Positions 11,301 to 26,211 of a stretch of 64,000 nucleotides of DNA are shown one piece after another. Within the stretch, counting starts at the first letter, position 1. Every line of letters begins with the position of its first letter. The notes beneath the pieces were generated by a model. The model was given only the letters and a program-made list of their open reading frames with translations, was not told where the DNA came from and did not search any database. The stretch is from IMG/VR virus record IMGVR_UViG_3300037010_002844, positions 62,001 through 126,000 of that record; one strand, 5' to 3'. A program made the translations under genes and the position numbers.

Positions 11301-11404
11301 CGGCCGGTGAGCAGGCAGTCATTTCCAAGACGGACGACGGCAAGCTCAAGGTCAAGAAGGCTGACTCGGATCACAGCCAGATCTGGGAGCCGATTGACGG
11401 CTAA
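8345..11404 (+). CDS. Large multidomain protein: LxxxILE leader, PcfJ-like N-terminal domain, HEAT/LRV-type repeats, Ala/Pro/Lys linker and small C-terminal domain
   Basis: 1019 aa. YLMW, KKDINQY, ASCKYGIGTKWCIAA and FYFVIDK; repeats like AVAHNPVTPKEDLAVLAGDESTSTRAAVAANPNTP. ATAATTA box 6 nt upstream. Confidence 0.75.
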   Translation: MKVTLGTLRESILESYVEILVEGRIEDARERYPDISDEDFDDLVENQPQGSNNKYLMWCAKQVDDGFSVNVVVQNMRLFDGNKQRLEKKDINQYEDPSAIETAVQALGGKSKSQESKQAKADSDVIYNDDHWLVIRPHTMGASCKYGIGTKWCIAATTSHNYFSTYSTSNNKFYFVIDKTQLQTTPPPPSSKYAIVIRDEAGRNNEAYDASDKRVPVSTVAKHVGVEWPAIWSKIEAHVKKVPLTREVEDEQRAVEEHVNDLMAGKDVSSQALQKIAKSAKMTLRVVQKVYDLAAKKVETGEDKYMLSFLMYALSDNIGNLTPDAAMFFIQKIGDGGNSYYIKRAIEHANLTEENFTQLVKSGNEAVIAAIMENPRAPDALKDEIVKVIPNFKNDMAKHDAWWALIKSGRYTLEQFKEAVESSSASHYHVVAGQVLRHIDELNLTPEQLMLIPVTDEYDLKNIMKAPNLPPAHLGALIVKLRDKLSTQFLIKLLKQSNIDSDTVELLWKSVTPDIRTALLQNPSIGASNASKFALSKNHAYRFAVAHNPVTPKEDLAVLAGDESTSTRAAVAANPNTPVNVLKQLSRDEAVAIRAAAASNAAVGNDVLQALTKDSDNFVRRVARKTLKSLKVAEAYVKAAMGMRRILLEELSDENENQDIMNPSWRDISTKSLKSDEFIVIFLLQNNGHATREEIESAWFDWMGRLVRRHDLWKSTQHGKEPVRGINASGSAWYWAPPGIDKGALFQLTPAGAAAAMHALNKVRGSVEPRRSEVGSAGARPGRTYYISNDVSAFDITGRENDEIESEEIEVNRYSSEPVIRGGKYTKLSPNRSRASRMRTKGAVYWKFTSPNGRETYTKNLPQVALKRGAEVTYVKAVHAPGSGGHPYNMAMVKYGDRYLLTAFPLMTTASGAREENAPENVAPPIKKSPPSKATAAAPAAAAAIEPTAAKGPKTTYKIYGRFKGHPAATRLKGQAYVAGQDTQFSAGEQAVISKTDDGKLKVKKADSDHSQIWEPIDG

Positions 11405-11739
11405 ACGTCGTCCTTGCGGTTGCCGATGCCCGGGGAGATGTTGCTAAATCTAGCACGTCGCTCGTGACCCTCGCGATCATAGTCACGAACTCGCTCGATG
11501 ATCCCGCGGAAAAATCCACTCCACTCATCAAGCGTGACTTCTTTCTTGAAGTCCTCAGCTAGCTGGACGGCATACGCCTCGATCTCTTCCTCCGAGGCTT
11601 CTGTCATGTCATTGCTGAGGGCCATGCGTAGCTTCCGCGCCAGCTTAACGCTGGGAGGAGGCAACATCCACTGGTTCTTTTCTTTATCCCAAGTTGGGAG
11701 AGAGACCTGTAGCGTTATCACGATGCCGCGTCGACTCAT
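11401..11739 (-). CDS. Hypothetical protein (MSRRGIVIT...)
   Basis: ATG at 11739 inside the track ORF 11401..11874; stop overlaps the convergent gene. Confidence 0.45.
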   Translation of the reverse strand: MSRRGIVITLQVSLPTWDKEKNQWMLPPPSVKLARKLRMALSNDMTEASEEEIEAYAVQLAEDFKKEVTLDEWSGFFRGIIERVRDYDREGHERRARFSNISPGIGNRKDDV

Positions 11740-11878
11740 CTGCGATCCTTTCTTCCTCGAGGCACCTGTTGTCGCGCTCCGTCCTCTCCATCGTCTCTTC
11801 CCACTGTTGTTCAGCGGCTTCCCAAGCCTCGGCCCACTGTCGGAGTGCGTCCGCGTTGGGCACGCCCTCGTCATTCAT
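11684..11878 (-). CDS. Small acidic hypothetical protein
   Basis: MNDEGVPNAD..., 64 aa, helical composition. Confidence 0.35.
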   Translation of the reverse strand: MNDEGVPNADALRQWAEAWEAAEQQWEETMERTERDNRCLEEERIADESTRHRDNATGLSPNLG

Positions 11879-11882
11879 AGCT

Positions 11883-12056
11883 TCAGGTCCTCCAAAGACG
11901 CAGAGATATGACTGTTGTGTGCCGTGGCCCCACAGTTGCACGGAGCGTAGCCCTCGTGATCGCATTCAGCTGGGCACGAGTCCGAGTGCCCGCGGTGGTT
12001 GCCAGCGAGACCTTGGCACGGACTATCTTCTCGATCAACTGTTCGTAGGTGTACAT
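11883..12056 (-). CDS. Small hypothetical protein
   Basis: MYTYEQLIEKI..., directly downstream of dnaE fragment 8. Confidence 0.35.
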   Translation of the reverse strand: MYTYEQLIEKIVRAKVSLATTAGTRTRAQLNAITRATLRATVGPRHTTVISLRLWRT

Positions 12057-12067
12057 GGGTTTTATGT

Positions 12068-13198
12068 TTACGTGATTTCCCTCAACTTCCAGACCGTCGT
12101 CGACGCGCCAAAGTCGTCCCTCTTGACCTCGGCACAACACAGGATGAAGGGGTCAGGAAGCTCCTTGCCGCCCCAGACAGAAATCTTCGTGGCCTTGCCA
12201 GTGGGTCCAACCGCAAAGATTTGCACATATTCCTTGCCATTGCGGGTCTTCTTCTTGATGCCCGTCACCGGCTTGCCACCCTTCTTTGCAGCAACAGGGG
12301 CCGTGACAAACCAGACGACCGCCGTGTCACCGTGCTCCAGGTCGTCAATGCTATTGACGCCCTTCTTCTCCAAGGCAGCCAAGATTTCGATGTCAATCAT
12401 GGCGGTGACGTCCAAAGCACCGAAGACGTCGACCATATTTTGAGCACGTTCAGAAGACGACCAGTCCTCGATGTCAGCGTAGTCCCTGACCAACTGGTAG
12501 AAGTTCTTAAGGCCCTCGTGCGGGTCAGACTTCGGGTGTCGCTTGATCAACGCCCCGTGATCGATGTCGACCTCTTCGGTGACCTCGACGCCCTTGCGCT
12601 TCTTGGTCACGGTCTCCACGTGAGAACCGAAGAGGACCTCGTGCATGTGATGATAGTTGTTGAAGACCTTGCCTTCGCCCACGATGTCCATACTGCCGAA
12701 GGCACCGATCTTGACCAGGGCCTCCATCGCCTTCTTGTTGAACTTGCTGTGTTTCCACTCGAAGTTGTCATCCCACAGCAACTCCTCGATAGTGTTGTAG
12801 GGACGGTTGGCCATGATCTCTTCGACCGCCGAGTCGCCGACACCCTTGCAGGACGTCATCGACGGCATCAACTTCTTGCCGGGCAGCGCGGTCCACCCGA
12901 GCCCCGCCAGGTTGATGTCGATCGGGACGATCTGATAGCCCAAGGCCTTTACCTCGCTGAACGCCTTAGCACGTTGAGCAGGAGTGTGCGACATGCTTTC
13001 GAGATAGGCACACAGCCATTCCTCCTCGTGATATGTCATCAGCCAGGCGCACCAGAAGCTGTCAATGGCGTATGCCACTGCATGGCTGTTAGACGTCAGT
13101 ATCCCGTTAGCGAGATAGAACTGGTGATCCGGGTGATCGACTTCGAGGTCATAGGTCTGGTGTCGACCCACGGGTGTGATAGACTTGATGTTACTCAT
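12068..13198 (-). CDS. dnaE: DNA polymerase III alpha fragment 8: split-intein C-part 6 (37 aa, 13088-13198) plus C-terminal extein
   Basis: YDLEV..HQFYLANGILTSN|SHAVAYA. The extein completes the DnaE motif GYGFNK|SHA and includes VPIDIN, KGVGDSAV (HhH) and an OB-like tail. Confidence 0.92.
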   Translation of the reverse strand: MSNIKSITPVGRHQTYDLEVDHPDHQFYLANGILTSNSHAVAYAIDSFWCAWLMTYHEEEWLCAYLESMSHTPAQRAKAFSEVKALGYQIVPIDINLAGLGWTALPGKKLMPSMTSCKGVGDSAVEEIMANRPYNTIEELLWDDNFEWKHSKFNKKAMEALVKIGAFGSMDIVGEGKVFNNYHHMHEVLFGSHVETVTKKRKGVEVTEEVDIDHGALIKRHPKSDPHEGLKNFYQLVRDYADIEDWSSSERAQNMVDVFGALDVTAMIDIEILAALEKKGVNSIDDLEHGDTAVVWFVTAPVAAKKGGKPVTGIKKKTRNGKEYVQIFAVGPTGKATKISVWGGKELPDPFILCCAEVKRDDFGASTTVWKLREIT

Positions 13199-13419
13199 GT
13201 GAGCAGGTCCTTCAACAGGTCTTCGATCGCTCCTGCGTTCGGTTCATCAAGCATTGCTTTAGCATACTCTTCTTCAATGTACTCGTCAGTCGGCTGGAGT
13301 TCAACCTTCGTTTCGCTTTTGCGTCGGTAACGTGCCGCGGCCCGTAACAGTTCGATCGGACTCAGACCCATGCGTTGGGCAATGTCATTCAGTGCGATTT
13401 CAAACGGCGGTCTTTTCAT
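13195..13419 (-). CDS. Small hypothetical passenger gene between the halves of intein 6
   Basis: 74-aa ORF; ATGA overlap with the start of dnaE fragment 8. Confidence 0.55.
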   Translation of the reverse strand: MKRPPFEIALNDIAQRMGLSPIELLRAAARYRRKSETKVELQPTDEYIEEEYAKAMLDEPNAGAIEDLLKDLLT

Positions 13420-14449
13420 ACGCTTTTCCTATCCGATGAACGCCAGGTCGAGGATCTTTCAGGATCTCAAAAAGCTTTTTCAAGCAATCAGGTTCGAAGC
13501 GACCGCCATCCTTGTATGAGAACTGATCGTAAGAAATTCGAATGAGTGTCCAATCATGTTTAGTGATGTAATCATCAAGCATTGCATCCATGCACTTCAC
13601 TCGTTCAAAATTATCCTCGCCTTTAATACGTGCATTAAAATGGATGATTCCATCAAATTCAACATAAATGTGTCTTGATCGATCGGCAATGTCAACTTGC
13701 TTTCTTTTAGATTTGTTTGGAAAAGCAACTGACTTGACGACCTGATTATGAACAAAATCATAACCTTCAACGTTTTTCAACAAATCAAACAACGCTAATT
13801 CCGGAATGCTATGCCAAATAGCATGTGCAGCTTTTGTGCACTTTTCGTAGAACTCATCGGGGTTCAACTCACGCCAACGGGCCAGGCGCTCAGCACGTGC
13901 CTTGAGTATCTCAGGCCGGGTTGACGTTAGTCTTGCAACGTCTGATGAACGTTTACGGGCTTCAGGTCGTCGATTAAGTTCTCCCATTAGTTCAGAGCGA
14001 CGTTTCCTCTCGCCCGGATTGCTCGTGATGGCCTCACTGACCGCACGGCCCATCTTTTCCTTGTAGGCAGTCAAATCATCACCGCGTGCCTTCGCTCGTT
14101 TGAGCCAGGCGAAATTCTGCCCACGATGCTTGAAACGCGCTGTCGAGACTTTCGATGTGATTGCGGCAGTCGGGTACGCTTTCAGGTATTCTTCTTTGCT
14201 CATACCATGCGTCCCCGACAAGTGCTTTGCCAGTGCCTTACCCGTGAAGCCACAGACTTGGCATGTGACACTCTCACTGTCACCGAGTATGAATCCTTGG
14301 CACCTAGCTTGGTGTTTTTCGTAGGCCTTCAGGTAGACGAAGAGCCTGCTACATCGGTCACAACGATGCTGAGGCCCCGTTCGGCAATCATCCACAGGGG
14401 CAACATCTCGTTTGTCTCCTTCGTCCTGAACTTGTGATCCCACGTGCAC
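13400..14449 (-). mobile_element. Free-standing homing endonuclease (C2H2 zinc fingers plus Vsr/DUF559-like nuclease); true start uncertain
   Basis: CDRC, CQVCG..HLSGTH and VDIADRSRHIYVEFDGIIHF...WTLIRI. AT-richer, and sits between IntN6 and IntC6. Confidence 0.8.
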
Positions 14450-15030
14450 TTTACCTTCTCTCCGGTCACCAACTCCACTTCTACCAAGTCTAGCTCACCG
14501 TGGTCGTGTTTTGCAACAACAGGGACGAGGATGTTTTTACCTGAATTCTCATCACGAGACATGACCAGGTCGCCGGGTTCGATGTGTTGAAGCTGCTTTG
14601 TCTCTTTGAACGTGCCGTCTGAAAAAAAGGTATTTACTGGTTCCGAAAAGTACAAACTTTTATTGAAGCCGTAGCCCGCGAAGTACAGAATCTTGTCGTA
14701 GAGGTTGTTGGCCACCTTCTCGGTATAACCGTTGGCGATGCAACCCTTGACGAACCCGTCACGGGTCTCTTGGGCTGCCTTCTTTGCCGCCTCACCGCCC
14801 GAGATGCTGCGCTTCATGATTGCGCGACGGACCTCGTCACACTTGTCCTTCGGGAAGCCGGCAGCCTTCTCGGCGAGTTCCATCACCTGTTCCTGAAAAA
14901 TTATGCAGTTATGCACGAGAAGGCCATTTGCGAAGAAGTTGTTGTTCTTCTTGACCTGGATGTCGTACACAGGCTGTGCAGGAACACGCTTGATCGCACG
15001 GATCTTGACGGGAACTACGTCAGGCATCAC
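14329..15030 (-). CDS. dnaE: DNA polymerase III alpha fragment 7: IntC5 (14908-15030) + 83-aa extein + IntN6 (14332-14658)
   Basis: VYDIQV..NNFFANGLLVHN|CIIFQEQVM...FAGYGFNK|SLYFSEPV...CTWDHKF. Confidence 0.93.
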   Translation of the reverse strand: MMPDVVPVKIRAIKRVPAQPVYDIQVKKNNNFFANGLLVHNCIIFQEQVMELAEKAAGFPKDKCDEVRRAIMKRSISGGEAAKKAAQETRDGFVKGCIANGYTEKVANNLYDKILYFAGYGFNKSLYFSEPVNTFFSDGTFKETKQLQHIEPGDLVMSRDENSGKNILVPVVAKHDHGELDLVEVELVTGEKVKCTWDHKFRTKETNEMLPLWMIAERGLSIVVTDVAGSSST

Positions 15031-15344
15031 TTACGCTCCGTTTCACGATGAGTCTGACAAACAATGTGTAATGACATTGAGCGCGACAAAGCATCACTGC
15101 CTAGAACGACTCGGCAAGGGTTGAGATTTTCCCCCACATGACGCATCCATTCTTGCAAAGCGTTGATCAATCGTTGGGCTTCGTTGAAACCCTCATGCGA
15201 GGGTGGAAACTGACAGCAACCTACCAAATCTCTAGTCCCAGGATCATATGCAATGATTCGCAAATTCCCATGAACGTTCATCTCTAGCGTTAGAGATCCA
15301 TAAACATCGTCATCGATCTCGCTAGTGTAAAGATCTGCGCTCAT
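15027..15344 (-). CDS. Hypothetical passenger gene between the halves of intein 5
   Basis: 105-aa ORF; stop overlaps the fragment 7 start. Confidence 0.55.
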   Translation of the reverse strand: MSADLYTSEIDDDVYGSLTLEMNVHGNLRIIAYDPGTRDLVGCCQFPPSHEGFNEAQRLINALQEWMRHVGENLNPCRVVLGSDALSRSMSLHIVCQTHRETERK

Positions 15345-15345
15345 A

Positions 15346-15591
15346 TCATTTTTCTTTCATGTTCAATGATGATGCGCAGAGTTGGCACACTGGTCCATCA
15401 ACACTCAAAACACGTTGACCATGGTATTCGAGCTCCATATCATTTCCGACCTCTTCATAAGCTCGAAATGTGTCGAACCAGTCGGCATACGTGAGATCAT
15501 CACGCTTTCCAAATGCCGTATGTGACTTCATCGTGTTGATAAAGTTCTTGAACGACGTAAGCAACTCCTCTTCAAAATCATCAATCTTCAT
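15346..15591 (-). CDS. Hypothetical passenger gene between the halves of intein 5
   Basis: 81-aa ORF, tightly packed with its neighbour. Confidence 0.55.
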   Translation of the reverse strand: MKIDDFEEELLTSFKNFINTMKSHTAFGKRDDLTYADWFDTFRAYEEVGNDMELEYHGQRVLSVDGPVCQLCASSLNMKEK

Positions 15592-15595
15592 GTCT

Positions 15596-15810
15596 AAATT
15601 GTCCTCAATTTGAGGTGATAGTTCAAGGCATCAGACTCCCAGACGCGGTACACCGTGAAGCCTCAAGTTCTTGTGGCAAGCGTCCATAATTGATCAAGCC
15701 TAAATTGCTTCTTCATCGCAGGTGTTAGTTCATGCTTCGCTGGGTTACTGTGCCAATAGTCGCCGTCGTACTCGATGATGAGGTTGAGTGATGGCACGAC
15801 GAAGTAGCCT
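15596..15810 (-). pseudogene. Truncated Vsr/DUF559-like homing endonuclease remnant
   Basis: Translation FVVPSLNLIIEYDGDYWHSNP...TRT*GFTVYRVWESD; N-terminus missing, in-frame TGA. Confidence 0.65.
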
Positions 15811-15814
15811 GGTT

Positions 15815-16414
15815 TCAGTACTTCATTCCCAAAATCTCGTCTTCAGACGTCAGTTCACCTGCTTGCACCCAACCACGAGGCGTCATGACAAGGTGATCTT
15901 CAGTCAAAGACAAAGTTTCTCCACCCTCCAGCTCAACCTCGATGATGTCACGTACGCCGTTTGAGGCGACAGCGACAACTTCGTCCATCTCGACGGTCTT
16001 CGTCATTTCATTGTATGACGGAAGCTTAGTTCCCACCATTCCTTGTTCAACGATTTGTCTAATGGGAACCTCACCTTGCTCAGTAAGGATATGTGTGTCA
16101 CCCGTCAAACACGAGTATGTCTTCTTCAGGATGTCGTTGACGCGGTGATCGCCCCACTCCAACTCCTTGCCGTCATTCTTCGCCTCCAAGTACAGTCGAT
16201 CGACTTTGGCGGCCAAGGGACCCGGGCGATAGATGCTGGTCAGCGTCGCGATGTCGATGATGCTCTTGGGCTTGCCTTTGACAAAGAGTCGCTGAGCGCC
16301 CTGGCCCGTGCAATTGTGAACAACGACGTCGTTAGCGACGAAATTATGATGATTTCGCACCTCGATGTCGTAGACGTGGCGCTTACCCACGCTGCGTGAT
16401 GACACAAGCTTCAA
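15815..16414 (-). CDS. dnaE: DNA polymerase III alpha fragment 6: IntC4 (16313-16414) + 67-aa extein + IntN5 (15818-16111)
   Basis: VYDIEV.NHHNFVANDVVVHN|CTGQGAQ...SIYRPGP...KKTYS|CLTGDT...LTEDHLVMTPRGW. Confidence 0.93.
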   Translation of the reverse strand: MKLVSSRSVGKRHVYDIEVRNHHNFVANDVVVHNCTGQGAQRLFVKGKPKSIIDIATLTSIYRPGPLAAKVDRLYLEAKNDGKELEWGDHRVNDILKKTYSCLTGDTHILTEQGEVPIRQIVEQGMVGTKLPSYNEMTKTVEMDEVVAVASNGVRDIIEVELEGGETLSLTEDHLVMTPRGWVQAGELTSEDEILGMKY

Positions 16415-16800
16415 GCGTCGTCTCCTTCTTTTCTAGCAACTGTAGGTCATATCCACTGACAAGTGCACACTTGAGCGTCGGATGCAACGTTACGAATGCG
16501 TCAAACTTCTCCCTAGCATCATCACGCCACCAGCCCTTGACTTCCACGTACACCCGCTTAAAGAGCTCCAACGTCGGTCATTGACGATGGAAGATCATGT
16601 ACGCCTCTCTTGTGAGCTGGATCCTGATCTCCTCCTCGCTGAAGCCCTCGTCCATGCAATGACGCCAGTTGTCATACAGGTCGACGACGCCATTCTTTCC
16701 GTTCCCGTTGCCCGCTGAGTGCAGAAAGTACAAAGGGGCGCTACGATGAGCGGAGCGCGTCCGTACAATCACATGTTGCGGAGTCGTGGGCCTGTTGCGT
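16383..16800 (-). pseudogene. Fragmented PD-(D/E)xK homing endonuclease remnant between IntN4 and IntC4
   Basis: Two short ORFs (16578..16772 and 16383..16571). The second reads VYVEVKGWWRDDAREKF, a nuclease motif III segment. Confidence 0.55.
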
Positions 16801-16856
16801 CTCTGTAAGGCGACATGGCCACGGTCGCGGCGAAACCTGCGACCAAAACGCCCGCC

Positions 16857-17333
16857 TCACGTCAATCCACGAGCTTCGTAACCACTGCTAGACCCAATCA
16901 ACTCGTCGTCTTCGGTTAGGTGCTGTGCCTCAACCCACCCGCGATTCTTCGTCAAGATGGGATGATCAGCGGTGCAGACAAGCTTCTTGCCGTCGTCGAA
17001 CACGAGCTCGATGCACTCCTTGGGTCCTTGGTCGTAAACGACGTCGACGACTGATGTGGTGAACTGCTGCTTGACTTCATCGAAGACCGTCACCTCGTCA
17101 CCGACATGGACGTCCTTGATCAACTTGTACGAGTCATCGCCCATCAGCACTGCCGTGTCCTGGTCGACGCACTGGAAGATGCCTGCCCACTTGCCTTTCT
17201 CGTAGACCTCGTAAGGTTTGGGATCGGTGAAATCAATGACGGCCGGGTGCATGTGCTGCTCGAACCAGGTCTTGATGTCATTGAATGATACCGCATTTGT
17301 ATGTGCGTCAACGTTAGCAACGACTTTTGCCAT
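16857..17333 (-). CDS. dnaE: DNA polymerase III alpha fragment 5: 54-aa extein (no IntC) + IntN4 (16860-17171)
   Basis: IDFTDPKPYEVYEKGKWAGIFQ (DnaE DDxxVY...GVFQ)|CVDQDT...CTADHPILTKNRGW. Confidence 0.9.
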   Translation of the reverse strand: MAKVVANVDAHTNAVSFNDIKTWFEQHMHPAVIDFTDPKPYEVYEKGKWAGIFQCVDQDTAVLMGDDSYKLIKDVHVGDEVTVFDEVKQQFTTSVVDVVYDQGPKECIELVFDDGKKLVCTADHPILTKNRGWVEAQHLTEDDELIGSSSGYEARGLT

Positions 17334-17351
17334 GTCTTTGTAAAGGTACTT

Positions 17352-19031
17352 TCACAGGTCCATAACGTACACCGCGTTGGAGCAACCAAAGATCTTAAAA
17401 AGCCTGTGTTCCATCGCCATCTCTTCTTGTGATGCGATCCCCGGAATCGCCCTGACAGCAAATCTATCGATACGATTTTGTCCGTCCGTCCACCAAAACC
17501 TAGGCTGCGTCATGTGATCAAATCTAAAACCAGATAGTTCATACGCCCGGCCAGTGCCACCCAACCTCATGTCACGGTATGTGATCATTTTTTGGTAACC
17601 ATGCTCACGTGACCAATCCCTGGCAGCGTTGATCAACCGCGACATGCCTCCAACGACGATGGTATCGCGGGCCGTTGAAACCCGCGCCAATTCAATTGTC
17701 TTAGATCCCCACTTAGTCTGCTGGTGCGGTTTTCGCAATGTCAATGCACAAATAATGTTTCCAGCAATGTCCTCTAGCCAGAACGAATGCGACGAAGGAG
17801 TGTTTCCATCGAGGTGATTGTTCGCCATGAACTGAGCGGTGATGGCTGGACGACCGCTGCGAAGATGTAGCTTTCGTGCCATCACGCGAGTAGCAAGACC
17901 AAGCTTTACCCTGATCATGCTTTTGATGATGTTTTTCTTTACATCATGGTGCCATTCATCGTCGAAGATATGTAGCAACGACACACCACGCTCAAGAGCG
18001 CGAGTCGACTTGTCTTGGTGATACGATGGTGGAGTACCGGTCGCCTCACTGTGCCAATAGACACCGTTGCACTCGATGGCAATCCTTCCGTTACCTGACA
18101 CGATGTCCAGCTCATAAGGCGCGATTGACTGTCTGTCGTTGGCGATGGCGTTCGAATCGAGCTTGACGAAGAAATCGAACACCTCACGATGCCAGCGAGA
18201 GAAATTAGCCGGGTAGCACGTTGAACACACCTTTCCCTTGTAAAGGACGTTAAAGGGAACAATATCAGGTACGTTACAACTGACGCATGTCACATGCACC
18301 GGTGTTGAGTATCCAGCAAACTCAAATTTTTCGATGTTCCACCTCGACCGCAGTGCATCAACTCGCCGTTCGACCTCTTCGAGAGACAACCGAAAAGGAG
18401 AGTTAGTGCCGTTCTCGATAAGGCGTTTTCTAGTCTCGATGATCGAACGTTTGATATCTTCAGAATTAGCGTTCCGAGACCAATGATTCAAGCGAACGCC
18501 TTCGCCGATCCGTTCTGATCGCCGTTTGATCCTATCGTCAGTTTCTGACGTCTGACCGTGCTGCGTCCAGTGTTTTTCTACTTGCCATTTTTCAGTCAAT
18601 GCTCGAGAGATGTTATGCGCAGCTCTTGTGATAGATTCATTATTTTCTTTAGTTTGTCCTGTTCTCCAGTGCCCGTGTTTTTTGATGAAATCACGACAAC
18701 CTTGTGCGGCCCTTCGAACCGATTCAGACGTTGTTTCTGACAGCCCCTTGTTCCATGCAGGCAATGATTTTGATTTCCGGCTAAGCGCACCTCTTACTTG
18801 AGAGTTCTTCTTGCTACAAACTCCACAGAGACGTTCATATCCCGTTTGAAAGGTCATGAACTTGACCGGCCCTGAACACTGAACGCACGGTCCAGGGTGC
18901 TCTCGAAAAAGAAGGTACGCAGCCTCCGCATTGAGCCCGTGCTTTTTAAGGAGATGTGCGCGGAGCGAATTTAGGCTAGCTTTTCGCAATGGATCATTGC
19001 ACTGTGGGCACCTCGAAGGACACGATGTCAT
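17352..19031 (-). mobile_element. Homing endonuclease: zinc finger, NUMOD3-like repeats, Vsr-like nuclease and C-terminal GNAT-like domain
   Basis: CPQC..HLLKKH, WNKGL, ELDI..IAIECNGVYWHSE, HIFDDEWH, ELARVS..VVGGMSRL..TYRD and YELSGF. Start placed at ATG 19031 (track ORF begins at 19151). Confidence 0.8.
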
Positions 19032-19851
19032 CGCCGGGCCCGAGCTCCCTCGCAAGGATGGTGCCCCTGTTGCTGGTGACGATTCGTTGGTCGCCGTAGA
19101 CGCCTCGTGTCGTTCCATCGTCGAGTTGGATCTCAAACCACCCTCTTTCATGTCGTTCCTTTTTGATGATGAGCTCGATGGCGCGCTCGATGAGCCGCAT
19201 CGTTTCTAGACCTAGGAGGTCGTACTTGATGAACTCTCCGATCTTCTCAAGGTGTTTATAATTTACGCCCTCGACCCAAGGTGACTGTGGCTCGCGGACG
19301 CCGGCCTTGCCTTTGGACGTCACCAAAGGCATCTTGTTGGGCAAATCGTCTGCAATCAGCACACCACCCGCGTGACGACCGAGACTACGATTCTGCTTGA
19401 AGAGGATCTTGATCGACTCGGCGACGACCGGGTACTTCTCAATGAAGCCGCGAAACGACGGGCTGACCGGCTGCTTACACTCTGGGCTACAGCCCTGGCA
19501 GATGGACTTCGACTCCGGGCCCTTAGGAGCCCTGCAGTGGAAGGCCATGGCCTCATCGTAGGTCAAGACGAACAGATTCTTGTCGTCGCCTTCCTTCATC
19601 GTCGCCTTACGGACCTCGTCCTCGACGGTCCGCGTGGCAGCGTTGGTCTCCTCGAATGGGATGCCGTAGAACTTGCCGATATCCTTTACAAGCGTTTTTA
19701 GTTTGAAACAGTTATAATTGCTGATGGGAACGACGTTTTCCCACCCAAAAAAGTTTCGAAGTTCATCAAGAACCTCATCTCGCCTGGCAAGATCGGTGTT
19801 GTGAACAACGACGCTCTTGTTGGACGCCAAAAATGAATGAACGACCATCAC
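18994..19851 (-). CDS. dnaE: DNA polymerase III alpha fragment 4: very short IntC3 (19798-19851) + palm extein + truncated Hint-like tail
   Basis: HSFLASNKSVVVHN|TDLARRDEV, RSLGRHAGGV and IKYDLLGL (third catalytic Asp). Ends in EIQLDDG..GDQRIVTSNRG..ARELGPGDDI. Confidence 0.9.
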   Translation of the reverse strand: MMVVHSFLASNKSVVVHNTDLARRDEVLDELRNFFGWENVVPISNYNCFKLKTLVKDIGKFYGIPFEETNAATRTVEDEVRKATMKEGDDKNLFVLTYDEAMAFHCRAPKGPESKSICQGCSPECKQPVSPSFRGFIEKYPVVAESIKILFKQNRSLGRHAGGVLIADDLPNKMPLVTSKGKAGVREPQSPWVEGVNYKHLEKIGEFIKYDLLGLETMRLIERAIELIIKKERHERGWFEIQLDDGTTRGVYGDQRIVTSNRGTILARELGPGDDIVSFEVPTVQ

Positions 19852-21570
19852 ATGAATCCTAACTCAACTACAGTTGAATTTACATGCGCTCGTTGTGGTC
19901 GAAACCACGAAACGCTACGAGCATTGAAGATCCACGAGGCACGACACAGGCGAGAAGACGCCAGGCCTCCCAAACAGGTGTCAACTTACGCGTGTCCGTG
20001 GTGTGAGGCGTCATATGACAGCGGGCGTAAGTTGACATTGCACTGCACAAAAACGCACCAAAAATCACCCGTCGTTGTGTATGAAACAAGGTACCCAGGG
20101 TGCAGGAAGACGTGCATCGATTGTTGCGACTGGGTCAGGTTCATCGATCAAGAAAAAGGATACCCCGAACGGTGTCCACGTTGTAGCCGAAAACACGCAT
20201 ACGCGTCCAAGGGCACCTCGTCATGGAACAAAGGCCTGACGAAAGACAATGACGAACGCATGTCAGCCAGTGCTGCAAACATGCGAGCTCACTACAAGGA
20301 ACACGGTCACCACAACTCCGACAAGACAAAGGAAAACAACGAAAGCCTTAAACAAAAGGCGGCAAAAATCAGCGACAGCCTGCGGAGGTATTATGCAACG
20401 CACAGCGGCTGGTCACTTGGCCTGACAAAGGATACGTCTAGCATCATTGAATCTCGCAGTAAGAAGATCAGCGCTTCGTTGAAAGGACGATTCTTTAGCG
20501 ACGTAACGCTTGAAAAAATGCGCAAGGCAAAGTTGCTGACGCACGACGAGGTACAAAAACGCCTCAAAGAAAAGCAGCTTAAACTCATTGACGAATATGT
20601 CGATACTGTCACCAAAGCGCGCATCGAATGCACGATATGTTCAACAATATTTGAGCGTTGCGTTGGCGCAGTGTTCAACAACGAGGCCAAGTGTCCCACC
20701 TGCTTTCCGCCTTGGTCAGACAAAACGAGCAGGTGGCAACAGGACGTCTACGCATTTATCCAGACGCTGGCACCTGACGCAGTCCTTAGCGATCGTAAGA
20801 CGCTCGGCGGAATGGAGCTCGACATACTCATTCCATCGCGCATGTTTGCCATCGAGTGCAATGGCCTATACTGGCACAGCGAGGCCGCCAATAGATTTGA
20901 GCACGATCACGCGGAAAAGAAGAGATTGCTGTCCCTCAAAGCCGGCGTATCGCTTTTCACGTTATTTGAGGATGAGTGGCGCGACAAACGACCGATAATC
21001 GAAAGCATGTTGCGCCATCGCCTTGGGTTTTCTACCAAAGTCGATGCGCGTAAGTTGAAAGCAGAACGCTGCGAGCCCGAAGAAGTTCGAGAATTCATCA
21101 ATCAGTGCCACCTCGACGGTCACGTGAGGGCCCAATTTGCCGTGCGATTGGTAACCTCATCGGGCGAAATCGTAGGCGCCTGCAGCCTTAGGTGGGCACG
21201 AAATGGGGCAGACAGAACGACGATTGAGATCGCTCGCCTGTGCTTCAAGCTTGGCACACATGTACGAGGCGGGGTGTCAAAATTGCTATCAAAGGCAAAA
21301 GCTATAGCAAGAGAAAACAATGCAGCGAGGTTGATGTCTTACTCAGACAATCGCTTGGGAGGAAACGGTTATGCCACCTCAGGCATGAAGTTCAACGGTA
21401 CCACAGTCGCTCGCTTCTGGTGGACTGACTTCATGCATCGTTACGACAGGTTCAAGTACCGAGCCAACAAGAAGCAAGGTCTAACAGAAAAACAGGTAGC
21501 GGAGGCTGCCGGCGTTTATCGCATCTATGGCTGTAGCAACTCTCGCTACGTCTTAGACGTCACAGCGTGA
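19837..21570 (+). mobile_element. Homing endonuclease paralogous to 17352-19031, on the opposite strand
   Basis: Two C2H2 fingers, WNKGLTK, ELDILIP..AIECNGLYWHSE, FEDEW, EIARLC..GGVSKLL and SYSDNR. Confidence 0.82.
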
Positions 21571-21872
21571 CGCTAATGTCATCGTCAAACTTTGAGGACG
21601 CATTTTCTTTGAGCCAGAAGATGGCGTCAATTGTGCGCTCGTCGGCGTCGGCGTCATCGCACGACGTAGCCCCATAGTATGGGGGCCAAATCGTGCTCAA
21701 ACCCTTTAACGCGCAGTTTGACCTGACAATCTTGAAATTCAGGATTTTCTGCAGCTCTCGTCTGAGCTATTCTTTCCAGGCCAGACACTATCACATCATC
21801 TGCTCGGCAGAATCGCCGTTGTCTGTAAGCTGCACCGCATCAACGTTGCTCGGACACGGTCCCAACTCCAGC

Positions 21873-22610
21873 TCAAATTTCATAGTTGCGCTCGCTGTGG
21901 TCTGTTCTTCTCTTAGACGCGCACCAATCGCTGCAAAAATTGTCTCCTTCGCCACACGCAAGGAACGTGCCAGGAATGACGCCCATGCAATAACCGACGT
22001 CATGTGATGGATCACCTCCACTTAGAATGGACGTATTGAACGGTACCACGTGGAATCTGTGATCGTCTTCAACAGTCAGGTCGACGTATCTAGCGTTGGA
22101 AGAGCCCCAACCACCGTGCTCGATCGATACGACCTCAACGCTGCCGCATGATGCCATCAATTCATCTCCGACCTTAAGGTCGCGGCAGTACACGATGACG
22201 CCGTCAGCTCTGACAAATTTGTGACCGGGCACCACCAAAATGTGGCCCAACGTACCATCATTGGCCCTAACTCTGACCCAGACAGCGTCCTCGAATGGCC
22301 GCAAATTTCTAGCATAGGTCGCAGTTACTGCGTGTGGCATTCCATCGCCTCCCAGGACGACGTCGCCGACAATGATGTCAACAGCTCGCTTATGAGTGCC
22401 GTCTGTCATGACGACAAGATGGTCCTCGTGGACGCAGTCGATATCAGGAGCACCAGAGTTATGTGTCAGCACCCAATCGCTATCGTTGTTGGACACCCAA
22501 AACGTATGCTGGCCTTCGACCTCGATGTCGATGAGTTCTACACTTTCATCGACAACCTCGATAGCTTCAATTTTGGCCGTGCTTGCTGATGAGATGTTGG
22601 GTTCCTGCAT
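21873..22610 (-). CDS. dnaE: DNA polymerase III alpha fragment 3: IntC2 (22458-22610) + 7-aa extein SGAPDID (22437-22457) + long IntN3
   Basis: LIDIEVEGQHTFWV..VLTHN|SGAPDID|CVHEDH...VPGHKF...DLKVGD...YVDLTVEDDHRF. Confidence 0.9.
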   Translation of the reverse strand: MQEPNISSASTAKIEAIEVVDESVELIDIEVEGQHTFWVSNNDSDWVLTHNSGAPDIDCVHEDHLVVMTDGTHKRAVDIIVGDVVLGGDGMPHAVTATYARNLRPFEDAVWVRVRANDGTLGHILVVPGHKFVRADGVIVYCRDLKVGDELMASCGSVEVVSIEHGGWGSSNARYVDLTVEDDHRFHVVPFNTSILSGGDPSHDVGYCMGVIPGTFLACGEGDNFCSDWCASKRRTDHSERNYEI

Positions 22611-23508
22611 AGTCCCTGTGCTCTAGATTGGCAATCGTATGGTACAAACCTTGTCGACGAAGTTCACCATAGAAGTCATTCATGTACACGACGTCGATGC
22701 GCTGACCAGACGCCACAACGACTTCCCGTGAACGTGCGTTTGAGTTAAGCAACTTTGAGAAACGCGATTTGCCTTCTCGCACACCTTTCAACTCCACGTA
22801 TCGGTCCTCATCACTGAACCAAAAGTCTGGAGTGTAACACTTCTCTTTGCCATCGATGACAACATGGAAAGACCTATGTTCATAGAATGGCATCTTACCG
22901 AGGTGCAAGCAATATCTGTAGTAGTCGGCTTCGAACGAGCTCTTGAAGTACGGGCTGTTTAGGATGTCGGAACGAAAACACGAGCGTCCGTTCACATGTG
23001 AAGCAACCATATCACGTGACTGTGCCTCGCGGGTGCACCGTTTGGAACAGAACCGCGGCACGTAGCTCTTCTTGGTGACGATCGGTTCGCTACAAACTTC
23101 GCATACCAACGTGTGGCGGTCAAACCTCGATGCAGCGAAACATTTGGGTGAACAGAACCTGCGATTGACGTTCTTCGTTGAGAAAGTGCCTAGACACTGT
23201 ACACATGTCAGTGTACGGAGCTCATTCTTTGTCAGCGCTTTCGCAGTGTACTTGTGCCTGCACGCATTCGAACATAGTTTTCTGTTGTTGTGACACTTTG
23301 GAACGTAGAACTCATCGCCGTACTCGACGCACGTCTTCACAAGCCTCGAGGGCATGGGAGCGTGTGACATCAGCTTCCTGTGAGCGACGGCACACTCATC
23401 AGTGCAGTACGGGCGATGGAGCCTACTACCAGAACCCTTGCAGTTGGGCTCATAGTTGAACTGAAACATAATACCACAGTGTTTACACTGTTTCTCAATG
23501 ATGCTCAT
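22567..23508 (-). mobile_element. Homing endonuclease with tandem CxxC...CSxxC zinc repeats and a PD-(D/E)xK nuclease
   Basis: At least four CxxC...CSxxC units, SSFEADY and YTPDF..RYVELKG. ATG at 23508 overlaps the fragment 2 tail. Confidence 0.82.
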
Positions 23509-23992
23509 AGTGGTACGTGTACAGCTCGTCACTCGTCGACAGCTCAGATGTATACTTCTTCACAGGTTGTCCATCAGGACCCACTGTCAACCACACATGA
23601 TTTTCAGAACACGTGAACGTAGTACCATTCACCTTCACGCGGTACGTCTTCTCATGTTTTGTGGTCATGGTGAACGTAACTTTACGGTGTGAGCCATCCT
23701 GTGAGACAACGCTGTCACCGACTTTCACGTCTCGAAGCGCGGACGACGAACCATCTGACATCAATACCTTTGTGTCTGGCGACAGACACCTGTGAACGCT
23801 AAGGAATCGCGCGAAAGGCAGGTCCCAGAACAACGGGTCCAAGTCGGTGATGTATAGGACGTAGGCGACCAGAGAGCCACCGCCCGAATTGTGGACTGCA
23901 ATACCTTCCACGTTGTAAGTGTGGCTGTTTTCCACACACAGGTCTACGACCTCACCCTTATACGGTACGACAGTCTTACTTCTGAGCTTCAT
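23495..23992 (-). CDS. dnaE: DNA polymerase III alpha fragment 2: IntC1 (23888-23992) + 33-aa extein + IntN2 (23498-23788)
   Basis: [21 protein letters not shown]|[27 protein letters not shown]|CLSPDT...CSENHVW. Confidence 0.93.
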
Positions 23993-24076
23993 GATATGCG
24001 TTCGCTCTCTTCATGTAAGCCTTGAGATCCCTGTCTAATAGACATTTGACGAGGATCAGGTAAACTTAGTTGAGTT

Positions 24077-25762
24077 TCATTCAACCTCGATTAGGTCATC
24101 ATCTTCAGTCAAGTGTTGTGCTTCAATCCACCCACGATTCTTCGTCAGAAACTTATGCTCCTTGGTGCACCTGATCTTCTTACCGTCATCAAACTCGAGT
24201 TCTAGCAGCTCCTCATCAACCTGATACCTGAAGATCTGAGTCACCATCTGATCAACACCATATGCATCCTTGATAACGTCGCCCACCTTGATGGTGCCAA
24301 TGGGAGCATGCATGCCGTCAGCCATTAGAACCCGCGTCTCAGGAACGAAACAACCGCGGGCTGGGCCGGTAAGGCACACATTGCGTGCCAGCTCCATGAT
24401 CTTCTGGTAGGAAATGAAGTAGTCAGAGTTTTTCATCACCTTAATGACGCCGAGTTCCTCCTTGAGGCGCGCGATATACTCTGGCTTGTCTTGAAGACCA
24501 CGCTTCACCATGCCCACCTTACAAAGCGAGATGAGGTGATTGAACGAGGTCGTGCCTTCGGGCACCAACAACCTCGTCGGAAACTTGGGCGAACGATCGG
24601 GTGGAATCTCCCCGATGACACTGTGTGCGATATCGTGAGTCCGCTCAATGGCGTCACAGACGACTTCATCGTCATACCAGTCGGTGCCTTCCTTGGAGCG
24701 CTGGTACTCATCCCACATCTGTTGGGCGTTCTTCGGATAGAGCTCACACTTCAGCTCATCCTTCGACTTCGGAATCGCGTCAGGATTGATCTCCTGGTAG
24801 TTCATCCAACCCAGGCGCTTGTAGAGCTCACGGTCCTTCCAACGATCGGGATTATAGTAGTGAGCATCGCCGGTGACGATCAGCTGCTTGTTGAGCCCAT
24901 TGCGACGAGCGAACTCCAGGATCGCGCGGTTGACGAGGTTCTGCGCCGGTAGGCGATTGAACTGCAGCTCGAGGAAGTAGTTTCCTTCGCCGACTGCATC
25001 GACCATGTGCTGGTAGGTATTGCCCACCGCGACAACGCATTTCTCGAGCAGCACAGGGTCACTGAGCAACCGTGCGTCGAGCTCGTCAAACTTGTACTGT
25101 TGGATTTCCTGGAATATGGAGTACGCCGGCATGCCGCCGATACAAGCGCTGCTGACGATGATGTCGCCGCCTTTGGCTGCCTCTTTGAGGACAGCATGGT
25201 CAATGCGCGGGAACTTGTAGAAGCCCTTCAAGAATCCCTTCGAACATGCTGCGAAGATCGCCAACAGGCCCTTCTGGTTCTTGGGCAGAATGACTAGGTG
25301 ATGCCGTCGGTTGACGGGATTGAAGTGTTTGGTCGATTTGGACTCTTCCTCGTTTTCGACAGTCAAGGCGTTGGACATCTCAATGTCCTCAGTCTCATCA
25401 TTTTCATCGATGGTGGCGATGATCTTGGTCTGCAGCTTTTCCTGCTCCTTAGCAAGCTTGGCCGCAACCCTCCTGTCTCCCTTCGCCTGCTCTGCGAGTT
25501 CGACGTCCTTCTTCCATTGCTCCAGGTCGGGATGGTAGTACGCCTCGACGCCGGGAATGTACTTGAACGACTTTCCCTTATTGGCCTTGGCCCACTCCTC
25601 GACCCACAGTTGAGCGTGGGCATAGGAGTTCATGTTCCCGTGCTCGGTGATGGCATGGCCATCGAGCCCGTTCTCCATGCACCACTTGAAGTGTTCATCG
25701 GGATAGCCCAAACCATCGAAGGGCGCATTACGAGAAGCCCGTGTGGTTGTGCAAACCGACAA
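24077..25762 (-). CDS. dnaE: DNA polymerase III alpha fragment 1: PHP domain to GPARG + IntN1 (24080-24352)
   Basis: PFDG, AITEHGNM, PGVEAY, HLVILPKN, SACIGG, YFLELQ, TGDAHY, RLKEEL..I, DYF and TGPARG|CFVPET...CTKEHKFLTKNRGW. The first 13 aa of the track ORF are probably off-frame. Confidence 0.92.
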   Translation of the reverse strand: MSVCTTTRASRNAPFDGLGYPDEHFKWCMENGLDGHAITEHGNMNSYAHAQLWVEEWAKANKGKSFKYIPGVEAYYHPDLEQWKKDVELAEQAKGDRRVAAKLAKEQEKLQTKIIATIDENDETEDIEMSNALTVENEEESKSTKHFNPVNRRHHLVILPKNQKGLLAIFAACSKGFLKGFYKFPRIDHAVLKEAAKGGDIIVSSACIGGMPAYSIFQEIQQYKFDELDARLLSDPVLLEKCVVAVGNTYQHMVDAVGEGNYFLELQFNRLPAQNLVNRAILEFARRNGLNKQLIVTGDAHYYNPDRWKDRELYKRLGWMNYQEINPDAIPKSKDELKCELYPKNAQQMWDEYQRSKEGTDWYDDEVVCDAIERTHDIAHSVIGEIPPDRSPKFPTRLLVPEGTTSFNHLISLCKVGMVKRGLQDKPEYIARLKEELGVIKVMKNSDYFISYQKIMELARNVCLTGPARGCFVPETRVLMADGMHAPIGTIKVGDVIKDAYGVDQMVTQIFRYQVDEELLELEFDDGKKIRCTKEHKFLTKNRGWIEAQHLTEDDDLIEVE

Positions 25763-25820
25763 ATCGTCGGGGCACTCGCACCGAGCTTCCCTTGGCGTCC
25801 TCCTTTCCTTGCTGCGTCAT
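25728..25820 (-). CDS. dnaE: True N-terminal 30 aa of DnaE (FVGLHNHTGFS), cut off from fragment 1 by a 7-nt insertion containing TAA
   Basis: ATG 25820 overlaps the upstream stop. Removing TAATGCG (25724-25730) restores the canonical PHP motif HxHTxFSxxDG. Confidence 0.8.
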   Translation of the reverse strand: MTQQGKEDAKGSSVRVPRRFVGLHNHTGFS

Positions 25821-26175
25821 TTACCTTCCCACCTTACCTTGTCACGGTACTGTAGACCCAATTGACGGTACTGGACACCGTCAATGACCACGATAGTCAC
25901 TTCAGGAAACTTGATTCGCATCAGTGCAAGCTGATAGCACGCCTTGTCAGACCACCTTCCCTTAATTTCGTAGTACACGCTTTCATCGTGAACGAAAATC
26001 TGGTGTGTACCAAGCCGGCCATGTCGGCGATCTGCGGCAACGTGGCCATACCAATGGGTATCAGCACGCGGAGCCACTTGGGCAGCTTGTTCCAGGTGGG
26101 CTTCAGCTGGGTGACGAGCTATGAAACAACGATGCAACCAGCGGCAACCTCGGCAGCAATGTCTGCAAGAACCAT
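25817..26175 (-). pseudogene. Decayed segment: membrane-protein remnant followed by a frameshifted PD-(D/E)xK endonuclease remnant
   Basis: MVLADIAAEVAAGCIVVS*LVTQLKPTWNKLPKWLRVL, and YTPDF slipping in a T run into VHDESVYYEIKG. Confidence 0.5.
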
Positions 26176-26211
26176 GTCGTCATGGTAAACCGGAAGCGAT
26201 CAGTTTTACAT

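What the first reader, a model, noticed from the sequence alone, without database searches (positions are those of the whole stretch)
17333..19151. One dnaE break has no intein: two-chain polymerase with a half-Hint scar
Seen: fragment 4 ends with a Hint-like half domain lacking Cys1 and with block B His replaced (GDQ). Fragment 5 starts directly in extein sequence with no IntC. An endonuclease fills the whole gap, leaving no room for a ribozyme. Inference: DnaE works as two non-covalently associated spliced chains, broken in the linker after KYDLLGL...LIIKK, or this break inactivates the gene. The scar may record an intein lost after fracture.
Basis: partly seen in the sequence, partly recalled or inferred. 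Interest (0 to 1): 0.68.

Follow-up and report, generated by a model that had tools for sequence, protein, structure and literature searches.

The report
Polymerase gene split by non-splicing intein remnant
In this giant phage the replicative polymerase gene is cut into eight pieces. Six cuts are mended by split inteins, but the seventh carries only a catalytically dead half-intein tail and a short head, so the enzyme most likely works as two chains held together without a covalent join.

Summary
dnaE lies on the minus strand in eight ORFs. Every break has split-intein halves with canonical catalytic residues except F4|F5.

F4 ends in a 49-aa tail that aligns to the second half of an N-intein (hhalign 95%, E 2e-8). 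An AlphaFold2 model of the tail matches mainly intein structures. It has no Cys1 and no TxxH.

That is not quite right: F5 begins with 16 residues that contiguous homologs lack, and they resemble the first strand of a C-intein.

A Vsr-like endonuclease gene fills the gap. Rfam finds no ribozyme there.

The new result is comparative. The same break, with a homologous tail and head, occurs in eight other phage lineages. Most of them have no inteins elsewhere in dnaE. Their gaps hold a GIY-YIG-like gene, an unknown ORF, or nothing.

These split lineages are scattered among contiguous relatives (AU test for a single clade, p 8e-7). So tail-endonuclease-head is a mobile cassette, not a local scar.

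The tail is acidic and the head mostly basic. Tail dN/dS is 0.15-0.4. Co-folding gives weak support (0.47 against 0.00).

Best reading: a two-chain DnaE clasped by a non-splicing split-intein remnant. It is a new variant of known fractured-gene and Aeh1 NrdA-tail systems.

The parts
18994..19851 (-). F4: 18-aa C-intein (..VVHN|T), then DnaE palm extein to ..LIIKKERHERG, then the tail
   Evidence: Pfam DNA_pol3_alpha covers aa 21-214, reaching the end of the profile. Translation.
18997..19143 (-). Tail: 49 aa (GWFEIQLDDG..YGDQ..NRGTILARELGPGDDIV..), homologous to the second half of an N-intein. It is catalytically dead and net charge -4.
   Evidence: hhalign, PDB profile search, AF2 model and Foldseek, charge, omega.
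17286..19156 (-). The whole inserted cassette (tail, endonuclease gene, head). It replaces about 16-23 nt of loop sequence found in contiguous alleles.
   Evidence: blastn against L001, L036, L012 and L013: homology stops at window 19156/19157 and resumes at 17278-17287.
17352..19031 (-). Free-standing Vsr/PD-(D/E)xK-like putative homing endonuclease. The ORF is open from 19151, but homology to its paralog starts at aa 48, so the likely start is the ATG at 19031, overlapping the last tail codons.
   Evidence: Weak Pfam MTES_1575 hit. 32% identity, E 1e-83, to the + strand ORF 19837-21570.
17286..17333 (-). Head: the first 16 aa of F5 (MAKVVANVDAHTNAVS). They are absent from contiguous homologs and resemble the first strand of a C-intein.
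   Evidence: Alignment A5, heads in relatives, DNA boundary.
16857..17333 (-). F5: head, then the start of the fingers-domain extein (to ..GIFQ), then a canonical N-intein (CVDQDT.., TADH)
   Evidence: Pfam Hint families and a weak DNA_pol3_finger hit. Translation.
24077..25762 (-). F1: PHP domain, start of palm, N-intein
23495..23992 (-). F2: C-intein, 33-aa extein, N-intein
21873..22610 (-). F3: C-intein, extein SGAPDID, 187-aa N-intein
15815..16414 (-). F6: C-intein, fingers extein, N-intein
14329..15030 (-). F7: C-intein, fingers extein, N-intein that starts with Ser
12068..13198 (-). F8: C-intein and the C-terminal extein of DnaE

Best explanation
The F4|F5 break is an insertion of a mobile cassette into the loop between the palm and fingers parts of a phage DnaE. 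The cassette consists of a tail-coding stretch, a stop, a free-standing homing endonuclease gene, a start, and a head-coding stretch.

Tail and head descend from a split intein. They are the second half of the N-intein and the first strand of the C-intein, which in split inteins form the charged antiparallel-strand interface. The catalytic parts (block A Cys1, block B TxxH, blocks F and G with Asn and the +1 nucleophile) are gone, so no peptide bond can be made.

The six canonical split inteins first ligate F1-F4 into chain A (about 777 aa: PHP, palm, thumb, tail). They ligate F5-F8 into chain B (about 543 aa: head, fingers, beta-binding region, C-terminal part). The two chains then associate non-covalently. 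The native palm-fingers interface contributes, and so, I infer, does the acidic tail pairing with the basic head as a small beta-sheet clasp.

Shown here: the anatomy, the Hint homology, the loss of catalytic residues, recurrence in nine lineages, scatter on the tree, and constraint on the tail.
Inferred: that the chains bind, that the clasp contributes, and that the endonuclease drives spread by homing.
For: 1. Anatomy.
2. Hint homology of the tail: hhalign prob 95.3%, E 2.2e-8, to the second half of the window's N-inteins. NrdJ-1 intein E 0.008. AF2 tail model pLDDT 78 with five strands; 13 of its 14 best Foldseek matches are intein chains, for example 6rix_A prob 0.99, TM 0.64, rmsd 2.1 A over 45 columns, though no E-value is significant.
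3. None of the nine tails keeps TxxH. No Cys, Ser or Thr is conserved at the N junction, and there is no Asn plus nucleophile at the end of the head.
4. The same break with homologous tail and head occurs in L002, L005, L008, L024, L037, L039, L045 and L049. Both chains are open, and L002, L008 and L049 show no inteins in the dnaE parts held.
5. The gap holds a GIY-YIG/NUMOD-type ORF in six lineages, a Vsr-like ORF here, an unknown ORF in L039 and nothing in L002. The tail-head pair therefore persists while the endonuclease turns over.
6. Split rows are scattered among contiguous ones: 9 changes, at least 7 forced by starred branches. Starred sister pairs are L005/L052, L039/L011, L045/L042 and L049/L006. 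The AU test rejects a single clade (p 8.4e-7).
7. Tail omega is 0.15-0.38 in the five pairs that could be computed, against 0.06 for the extein.
8. The first tail strand has charge -2 to -3 in all nine. Heads are 0 to +3, positive in 7 of 8. Dassa 2009 describes the same polarity for the NrdJ-1, IMPDH-1 and cyanobacterial DnaE split inteins (PMC2677866).
9. Co-fold of F4(19-285) with F5(1-54): ipSAE 0.47 (0.42-0.51), best control 0.00. In the tool's calibration the mark was reached by 58 of 80 solved complexes and 2 of 110 mismatched pairs. A score of 0.60 or under, as here, was seen in only 7 of those 80 and in both mismatches, so the verdict is 'weak support'. Runs agree in at least 68% of contacts; partner pLDDT is at least 56.
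10. No RNA family was found in the gaps of the window or of eight relatives.
11. Precedent: the Aeh1 NrdA-a/NrdA-b tails are essential for activity. Their authors speculated they could be remnants of a degenerate intein (PMC3045599).
Against:
- The co-fold support is only weak, and no contacts were returned. Tail-head contact is therefore not shown.
- The head is too short for any statistical test of C-intein homology.
- Tail omega is much higher than extein omega, and dS is near saturation.
- The genome also encodes a PolA-like protein, so DnaE need not be its only polymerase.
- There is no clear Shine-Dalgarno sequence before F5 in the window.
- The direction of change (gain by homing or loss by conversion) is not resolved.
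Confidence: 0.6

Rival explanations
1. The polymerase does work as two chains, but tail and head are inert leftovers of a dead split intein. Association rests only on the native palm-fingers interface.
For: In Aeh1 NrdA the tails were not needed for a/b heterodimer formation. The co-fold tool returned no contacts. Tail omega (0.15-0.38) is far above extein omega (0.06).
Against: The tail ORF stays open at a similar length (42-49 aa from the conserved Gly) in nine lineages at only 18-53% identity. It keeps a confidently predicted five-strand fold. Omega is below 1, and the charge polarity of tail and head is conserved.
Confidence: 0.2
2. The break inactivates dnaE in this phage. Replication then relies on the PolA-like enzyme or on the host polymerase.
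For: A PolA-like ORF lies in the same genome. There is no recognisable RBS before F5.
Against: All eight pieces are open, and the other six breaks keep canonical splice residues. The same break sits in otherwise intact, intein-free dnaE genes of relatives whose chain B is 515-541 aa. Extein omega is 0.06.
Confidence: 0.07
3. The two halves are joined after all, either by an unrecognised intron or bypass at RNA level or by unconventional protein splicing.
For: No positive evidence. It rests only on the absence of RNA and protein data.
Against: Rfam finds nothing. The gap is filled by an ORF. The tail is conserved as protein, so it is translated. Tail plus head total about 60 aa, against about 130 aa for the smallest Hint domains (from knowledge), and they lack every nucleophile.
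Confidence: 0.04
4. The tail is kept because it binds something other than the head. This could be another replisome part, or it could act in cis on endonuclease expression, since the endonuclease start overlaps the end of the tail.
For: The endonuclease start overlaps or abuts the tail stop in the window and in relatives. Translational coupling is therefore plausible.
Against: L002 keeps the tail without any endonuclease. Tail and head subtypes co-vary: the window and L002 differ from the other lineages in both.
Confidence: 0.09

Closest known systems
Fractured genes with split inteins and free-standing GIY-YIG or Vsr-like endonucleases (Dassa et al. 2009, PMC2677866)
   Same: The two gene halves are adjacent on one strand with a free-standing endonuclease of the same two kinds between them. 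DnaE is among the hosts. The other six breaks of this very gene fit the description. The tail's best solved relative is NrdJ-1 from that study.
   Different: At this break the intein halves are cut down to the second N-intein half plus one C-intein strand and have no catalytic residue, so trans-splicing cannot occur. That paper mentions one endonuclease-fractured intein-less gene. In the passages I read I saw no Hint-derived tails described.
Aeromonas phage Aeh1 nrdA-a / mobE / nrdA-b with assembly tails (Friedrich 2007, cited from memory; Crona et al. 2011, PMC3045599)
   Same: An essential replication-related gene is split by a free-standing endonuclease. There are C- and N-terminal tails absent from unsplit homologs, with opposite charges. 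The product is assembled non-covalently.
   Different: The host gene (RNR), the endonuclease family (HNH) and the charge polarity all differ. In Aeh1 the origin of the tails was unknown and an intein origin was only speculated. Here Hint homology is measurable, and the cassette recurs in nine lineages.
Split gp43 family-B DNA polymerase of T4-like Aeromonas phages (Petrov, Karam; as cited in PMC2677866)
   Same: A replicative polymerase is encoded as two genes, with a GIY-YIG endonuclease between them in one case.
   Different: It is a different polymerase family. I know of no intein-derived tails there; this was not checked here.
Cyanobacterial split DnaE intein (Npu, Ssp)
   Same: DnaE is made from two genes. 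The halves associate through charged strands with an acidic N-intein and a basic C-intein.
   Different: There the halves splice into one chain, the insertion site differs, and the genes lie far apart.

Membership tests
Split intein (Hint superfamily, protein trans-splicing) | Block A with Cys1 or Ser1 directly after the N-extein | tested here: not met
   The tail aligns only to N-intein columns 53-95. Junction residues are G|W, G|I, G|L or G|M in the nine lineages.
Split intein (Hint superfamily, protein trans-splicing) | Block B TxxH | tested here: not met
   The position reads YGDQ, YGDE, FPGS, LLAS, LKST, LHGD, LRGM, LTRK and LPGC.
Split intein (Hint superfamily, protein trans-splicing) | Blocks F and G ending in Asn, followed by a +1 Cys, Ser or Thr | tested here: not met
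   Heads are 13-16 aa and run straight into the extein motif F.D[IV]K.WY. No conserved Asn plus nucleophile is present.
Split intein (Hint superfamily, protein trans-splicing) | Hint fold | tested here: inconclusive
   Only about half of the fold is present. The tail model matches inteins over 37-45 columns at rmsd 1.2-2.1 A, but no Foldseek E-value is significant. Pfam gives no Hint hit.
Fractured gene (Dassa 2009) | Two halves of one gene adjacent on one strand with a free-standing endonuclease ORF between them | tested here: met
Fractured gene (Dassa 2009) | Complete split-intein halves on both sides of the break | tested here: not met
   Not met at F4|F5. Met at the other six breaks.
Endonuclease-split gene with assembly tails (Aeh1 NrdA type) | Tails at the break that unsplit homologs lack | tested here: met
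   Alignments A1, A4 and A5, and DNA boundaries.
Endonuclease-split gene with assembly tails (Aeh1 NrdA type) | Tails needed for assembly or activity | not testable with these tools
   Indirect evidence only: omega below 1, charge polarity, weak co-fold.
DNA polymerase III alpha (DnaE) | PHP, palm with PDxD, and fingers domains in order | tested here: met
   Pfam PHP, DNA_pol3_alpha and DNA_pol3_finger hits across F1-F7. PDB matches of the contiguous relative to Pol III alpha at E 1e-36.
Group I / group II intron | Ribozyme core detectable by covariance model | tested here: not met
   No Rfam match in the window at E<=1, nor in eight relatives at gathering score.

The most novel reading that the evidence does not exclude
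The cassette may be a distinct kind of selfish element: a split intein that has given up splicing and kept only its association half. On this reading it spreads by homing into intact dnaE alleles of related giant phages. It stays tolerable because its own tail and head re-clamp the two polymerase halves. This would be a third way, besides RNA and protein splicing, for a mobile element to neutralise the damage of its insertion, and here its evolutionary origin would be traceable.
Probability: 0.4. Interest if true: 0.8.

Novelty: new variant of a known kind. Interest (0 to 1): 0.66.

Why it matters
Crona et al. (2011) showed that tails can rescue a gene split by an endonuclease, and they speculated that such tails might be degenerate inteins. 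This locus offers sequence and fold-model evidence for that link. It recurs in nine lineages and sits next to six intact split inteins in the same gene.

If the clasp works, it is a natural, small (about 45 + 13 aa), non-splicing heterodimerisation pair derived from the part of a split intein that mediates fragment recognition. That would interest people studying intein evolution and protein engineers.

It also shows that a replicative Pol III alpha may tolerate a break at the palm-fingers boundary. And it warns annotators that 'truncated' dnaE ORFs in giant phages may be functional halves.

Tried and rejected
- Megablast of the region against GenBank phages found nothing. tblastn found only distant DnaE genes at 25-31% identity.
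- Pfam gives no Hint hit for the tail and no GIY-YIG hit for the gap ORFs of relatives, only NUMOD and I-TevI DNA-binding modules. The GIY-YIG label therefore rests on the YVY..Y[VC]GKG motif plus those modules.
- Rfam found nothing, so an intron is rejected as far as covariance models can see.
- L002's 290-nt gap shows no remnant of any of the endonucleases.
- DNA comparison of split and contiguous sister pairs (about 75-85% identity) was too diverged to show co-conversion tracts.
- An alternative alignment puts the tail's second part on block A, because the Hint fold has internal pseudo-symmetry (the 8r2c and Sonic hedgehog hits). I rejected it in favour of the block B half, because the preceding hairpin (..IELEIDG..R) also aligns there.
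- A three-piece split intein was considered and rejected: the scissile bonds must flank block A and block G, and both are absent.
- Complex prediction returned only 'weak support' and no contacts.
- The large protein searches were not needed and were not run.
Full report
**Setting**

The window is bases 62001-126000 of a 309-kb virus record that CheckV estimates as 91% complete. Its only dnaE lies on the minus strand in eight ORFs:
- F1 24077-25762
- F2 23495-23992
- F3 21873-22610
- F4 18994-19851
- F5 16857-17333
- F6 15815-16414
- F7 14329-15030
- F8 12068-13198

Pfam places PHP, DNA_pol3_alpha and DNA_pol3_finger along them in the proper order, with Hint-type hits at the ends of the pieces.

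At six breaks the upstream piece ends in an N-intein:
- It starts with Cys, or with Ser in F7.
- It carries a block B motif ending in His (TxxH or SxxH) in five of the six. I did not identify block B in F3's N-intein.

At the same six breaks the downstream piece starts with a C-intein that ends in HN or SN and is followed by Ser, Thr or Cys. Endonuclease-like ORFs lie between several pieces. This is the 'fractured gene' arrangement of Dassa et al. 2009 (PMC2677866), here repeated six times in one gene.

**The observation**

The F4|F5 break is different.
- *The tail.* After the extein ..KYDLLGLETMRLIERAIELIIKKERHERG, F4 continues for 49 residues (GWFEIQLDDGTTRGVYGDQRIVTSNRGTILARELGPGDDIVSFEVPTVQ) and then stops. 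Pfam sees no Hint domain there.
- *Hint homology by sequence.* A profile of the nine homologous tails found later aligns to columns 53-95 of 106 of a profile of the window's own N-inteins. That is the half holding block B (hhalign probability 95.3%, E 2.2e-8). The same profile finds the NrdJ-1 split intein (8ubs, residues 63-106, E 0.008) and, more weakly, other Hint proteins in the PDB.
- *Hint homology by fold model.* AlphaFold2 predicts the tail as five beta strands. Block-mean pLDDT is 75-88 within F4, and mean pLDDT is 78 for the tail alone. Thirteen of the 14 best Foldseek matches of the tail model are intein chains, for example 6rix_A (prob 0.99, TM 0.64, rmsd 2.1 A over 45 columns). 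Because the query is short, no E-value is significant.
- *Loss of catalysis.* The first half of the N-intein, with Cys1, is missing, and TxxH reads YGDQ.
- *F5.* It has no block F or G. It is not pure extein either. DNA homology to contiguous relatives stops at window 19156 and resumes only at about 17285. The first 16 residues of F5 therefore belong to the insertion.
- *The gap.* It holds a 599-aa ORF. Homology to its paralog on the + strand (19837-21570; 32% identity, E 1e-83) begins at residue 48, so the likely start is the ATG at 19031. It has a weak PD-(D/E)xK (MTES_1575) hit and a ..LDI..x(n)..IECNGxYWH.. motif of the Vsr-like kind. Eighteen bases separate its stop from F5's ATG.
- *No ribozyme.* Rfam finds nothing in 11000-27000.

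**Relatives**

Scans of IMG/VR and JGI metagenomes gave about 35 distinct dnaE alleles of this clade.
- *Contiguous alleles.* Most are contiguous at this site and read ..IELILIKEGNPxPTFxDVKxWYE...
- *Split alleles.* Eight further lineages (L002, L005, L008, L024, L037, L039, L045, L049) are broken at exactly this loop. Each has a tail of 42-48 residues from the conserved Gly, with the pattern G-h-h-E-h-E-h-D-G...R...V-K-L-x-D-G...L...DD. In seven of them (L039's start was not resolved) chain B begins with a 13-15-residue head, typically M[AS]KITSIxxVxx[ST].
- *Head resemblance.* The head resembles the first strand of the window's C-inteins (F8: MSNIKSITPVG; F6: MKLVSSRSVG). It is too short for any statistical test.
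- *Inteins elsewhere.* L002, L008 and L049 show no inteins in the dnaE parts held. L002's chains are 782 and 515 aa. L024 and L039 are multiply fractured like the window.
- *What sits in the gap.* Six lineages hold an ORF with a GIY-YIG-like N-terminal motif; NUMOD or I-TevI-type DNA-binding modules were detected in three of them (L008, L024, L037). L039 holds an unknown 217-aa ORF, and L002 holds nothing recognisable in about 290 nt.
- *Tight packing.* ORFs abut or overlap by a few bases, as in an operon.
- *No ribozyme.* No Rfam family reaches its gathering score in any of these eight loci.

**A mobile cassette rather than a local scar**

I built a maximum-likelihood tree from the flanking extein (241 columns, 35 rows).
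- The nine split rows need nine changes of state, of which at least seven are forced by starred branches.
- Five split rows have a contiguous nearest relative: L005/L052, L039/L011, L045/L042, L049/L006 (all starred) and L008/L057 (84/59, not starred). The window sits alone inside a starred clade of eight contiguous alleles.
- Holding the split rows together costs 163 log-likelihood units (AU p 8.4e-7). The group was defined by an independent character but named after the tree was seen.
- Tail dS (1.09 for window-L002, 0.97 for L005-L039) is lower than extein dS for the same pairs (2.97, or saturated). This hints that the cassette is younger than the host-gene divergence. With 49 codons it is only a hint.

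So the tail, endonuclease slot and head have been gained by homing, or lost by conversion, many times. I cannot say which.

**Is it functional?**

- Nine diverged lineages (tails 18-53% identical) keep the tail ORF open at nearly the same length and with the same strand pattern.
- Tail omega is 0.15-0.38 in the five pairs where dS could be estimated, against 0.06 for the extein.
- The first tail strand carries charge -2 to -3 in all nine lineages. Heads carry 0 to +3, positive in 7 of 8. This is the polarity that Dassa et al. report for the interacting long strands of the NrdJ-1, IMPDH-1 and cyanobacterial DnaE split inteins.
- Split-intein halves are reported to recognise each other first through such charged, disordered regions ('capture and collapse', Shah et al. 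2013, as summarised in PMC11766414). From memory of that work, the second N-intein half and the first C-intein part form one lobe of the fold. I could not check this against coordinates here.
- Co-folding F4(19-285) with F5(1-54), using my own alignments, scored ipSAE 0.47 (runs 0.42, 0.47, 0.51) against a best control of 0.00. In the tool's calibration 58 of 80 solved complexes and 2 of 110 mismatched pairs reached the mark. Only 7 of those 80, and both mismatches, scored 0.60 or under, so the verdict is 'weak support'. Runs agree in at least 68% of contacts, partner pLDDT is at least 56, and no contacts were released.
- The break lies where Pfam's DNA_pol3_alpha model ends (F4 aa 214) and DNA_pol3_finger begins (F5 aa 20). 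It corresponds to about residues 636-645 of Thermus aquaticus Pol III alpha. That is a domain boundary and a plausible place for a tolerated split.

**Mechanism proposed**

1. The six split inteins ligate F1-F4 into chain A (about 777 aa) and F5-F8 into chain B (about 543 aa). These sizes match the natural two-chain relatives.
2. No chemistry can join A to B, because every nucleophile and both splice junctions of the former intein are gone (shown).
3. The chains associate non-covalently through the palm-fingers interface and, I infer, through the acidic tail pairing with the basic head.
4. The endonuclease in the slot presumably cuts cassette-free alleles and drives copying of the whole cassette (inferred from family and distribution).

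**Caveats**

- There are no RNA or protein data.
- The genome also has a PolA-like ORF, so DnaE may not be indispensable.
- F5 has no clear Shine-Dalgarno sequence.

**Comparison with what is known**

This is neither a split intein nor, at this break, a fractured gene in Dassa's sense, because defining features were tested and not met. It works most like the Aeh1 nrdA-a/mobE/nrdA-b system. There, tails that came with the endonuclease are essential for activity, and the authors speculated that they might be remnants of a degenerate intein (PMC3045599). A replicative polymerase split by a GIY-YIG gene is also known for family-B gp43 of T4-like Aeromonas phages (cited).

Three things are new here:
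- measurable Hint ancestry of the tail;
- loss of all catalytic parts with retention of the association half;
- recurrence as a mobile cassette across a phage clade, side by side with working split inteins.

My literature searches found no description of this, but the library is incomplete.

**Verdict**

The two-chain interpretation is the best supported. The 'scar' is better described as a conserved, mobile, non-splicing intein derivative. I rate it a new variant of a known kind, with interest 0.66.

Noticed in passing
window 19798-22436 (F3|F4 break) and 19837-21570 (+): The intein at this break sits inside the catalytic PDID|TD motif and is split at an unusual place. The N-part on F3 is 187 aa and already contains a block-F-like RYVDLTVEDDHRFHV, while the C-part on F4 is only 18 aa (MVVHSFLASNKSVVVHN|T). 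The endonuclease paralog between them is on the opposite strand to dnaE. L024 shows no intein at this site.
   Followed up: partly
window 14332-14658 and 13088-13198: F7's N-intein starts with Ser (SLYFSEP) instead of Cys, and F8's C-intein ends in TSN|S. This may be a cysteine-less split intein.
   Followed up: no
window 22567-23532 (-), 13400-14449 (-), 17352-19151 (-), 19837-21570 (+): Four endonuclease-like ORFs of at least three kinds lie in one gene. One is 321 aa with no Pfam hit (69% identical homolog in L024). One is 349 aa with a ROS/MucR zinc finger. Two are 577/599-aa paralogs with weak MTES_1575 nuclease hits; the 577-aa one also has a weak GNAT-like hit.
   Followed up: partly
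window 57304-57945 (-): A family-A DNA polymerase-like ORF (416-aa open frame, Pfam DNA_pol_A E 2e-11) lies in the same phage. No family-B polymerase was found.
   Followed up: no
L039:3088-3738: In this relative the tail-head gap holds a 217-aa ORF that resembles neither the GIY-YIG-type nor the Vsr-like endonucleases.
   Followed up: no
L002:8411-8699: This is the only lineage with an empty gap (about 290 nt, no endonuclease remnant, no Rfam hit). Chain B appears to start at a GTG. It is a natural 'minimal' version of the split.
   Followed up: partly
L011:7692-9092: This relative has an intein-like insertion at a further site inside the PHP/F1 region of dnaE that is not occupied in the window.
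   Followed up: no
window 15027-15591 (-) and 16415-16856: The F6|F7 gap holds two small ORFs (105 and 81 aa) rather than an endonuclease. The F5|F6 gap (about 440 nt) holds no long ORF.
   Followed up: no
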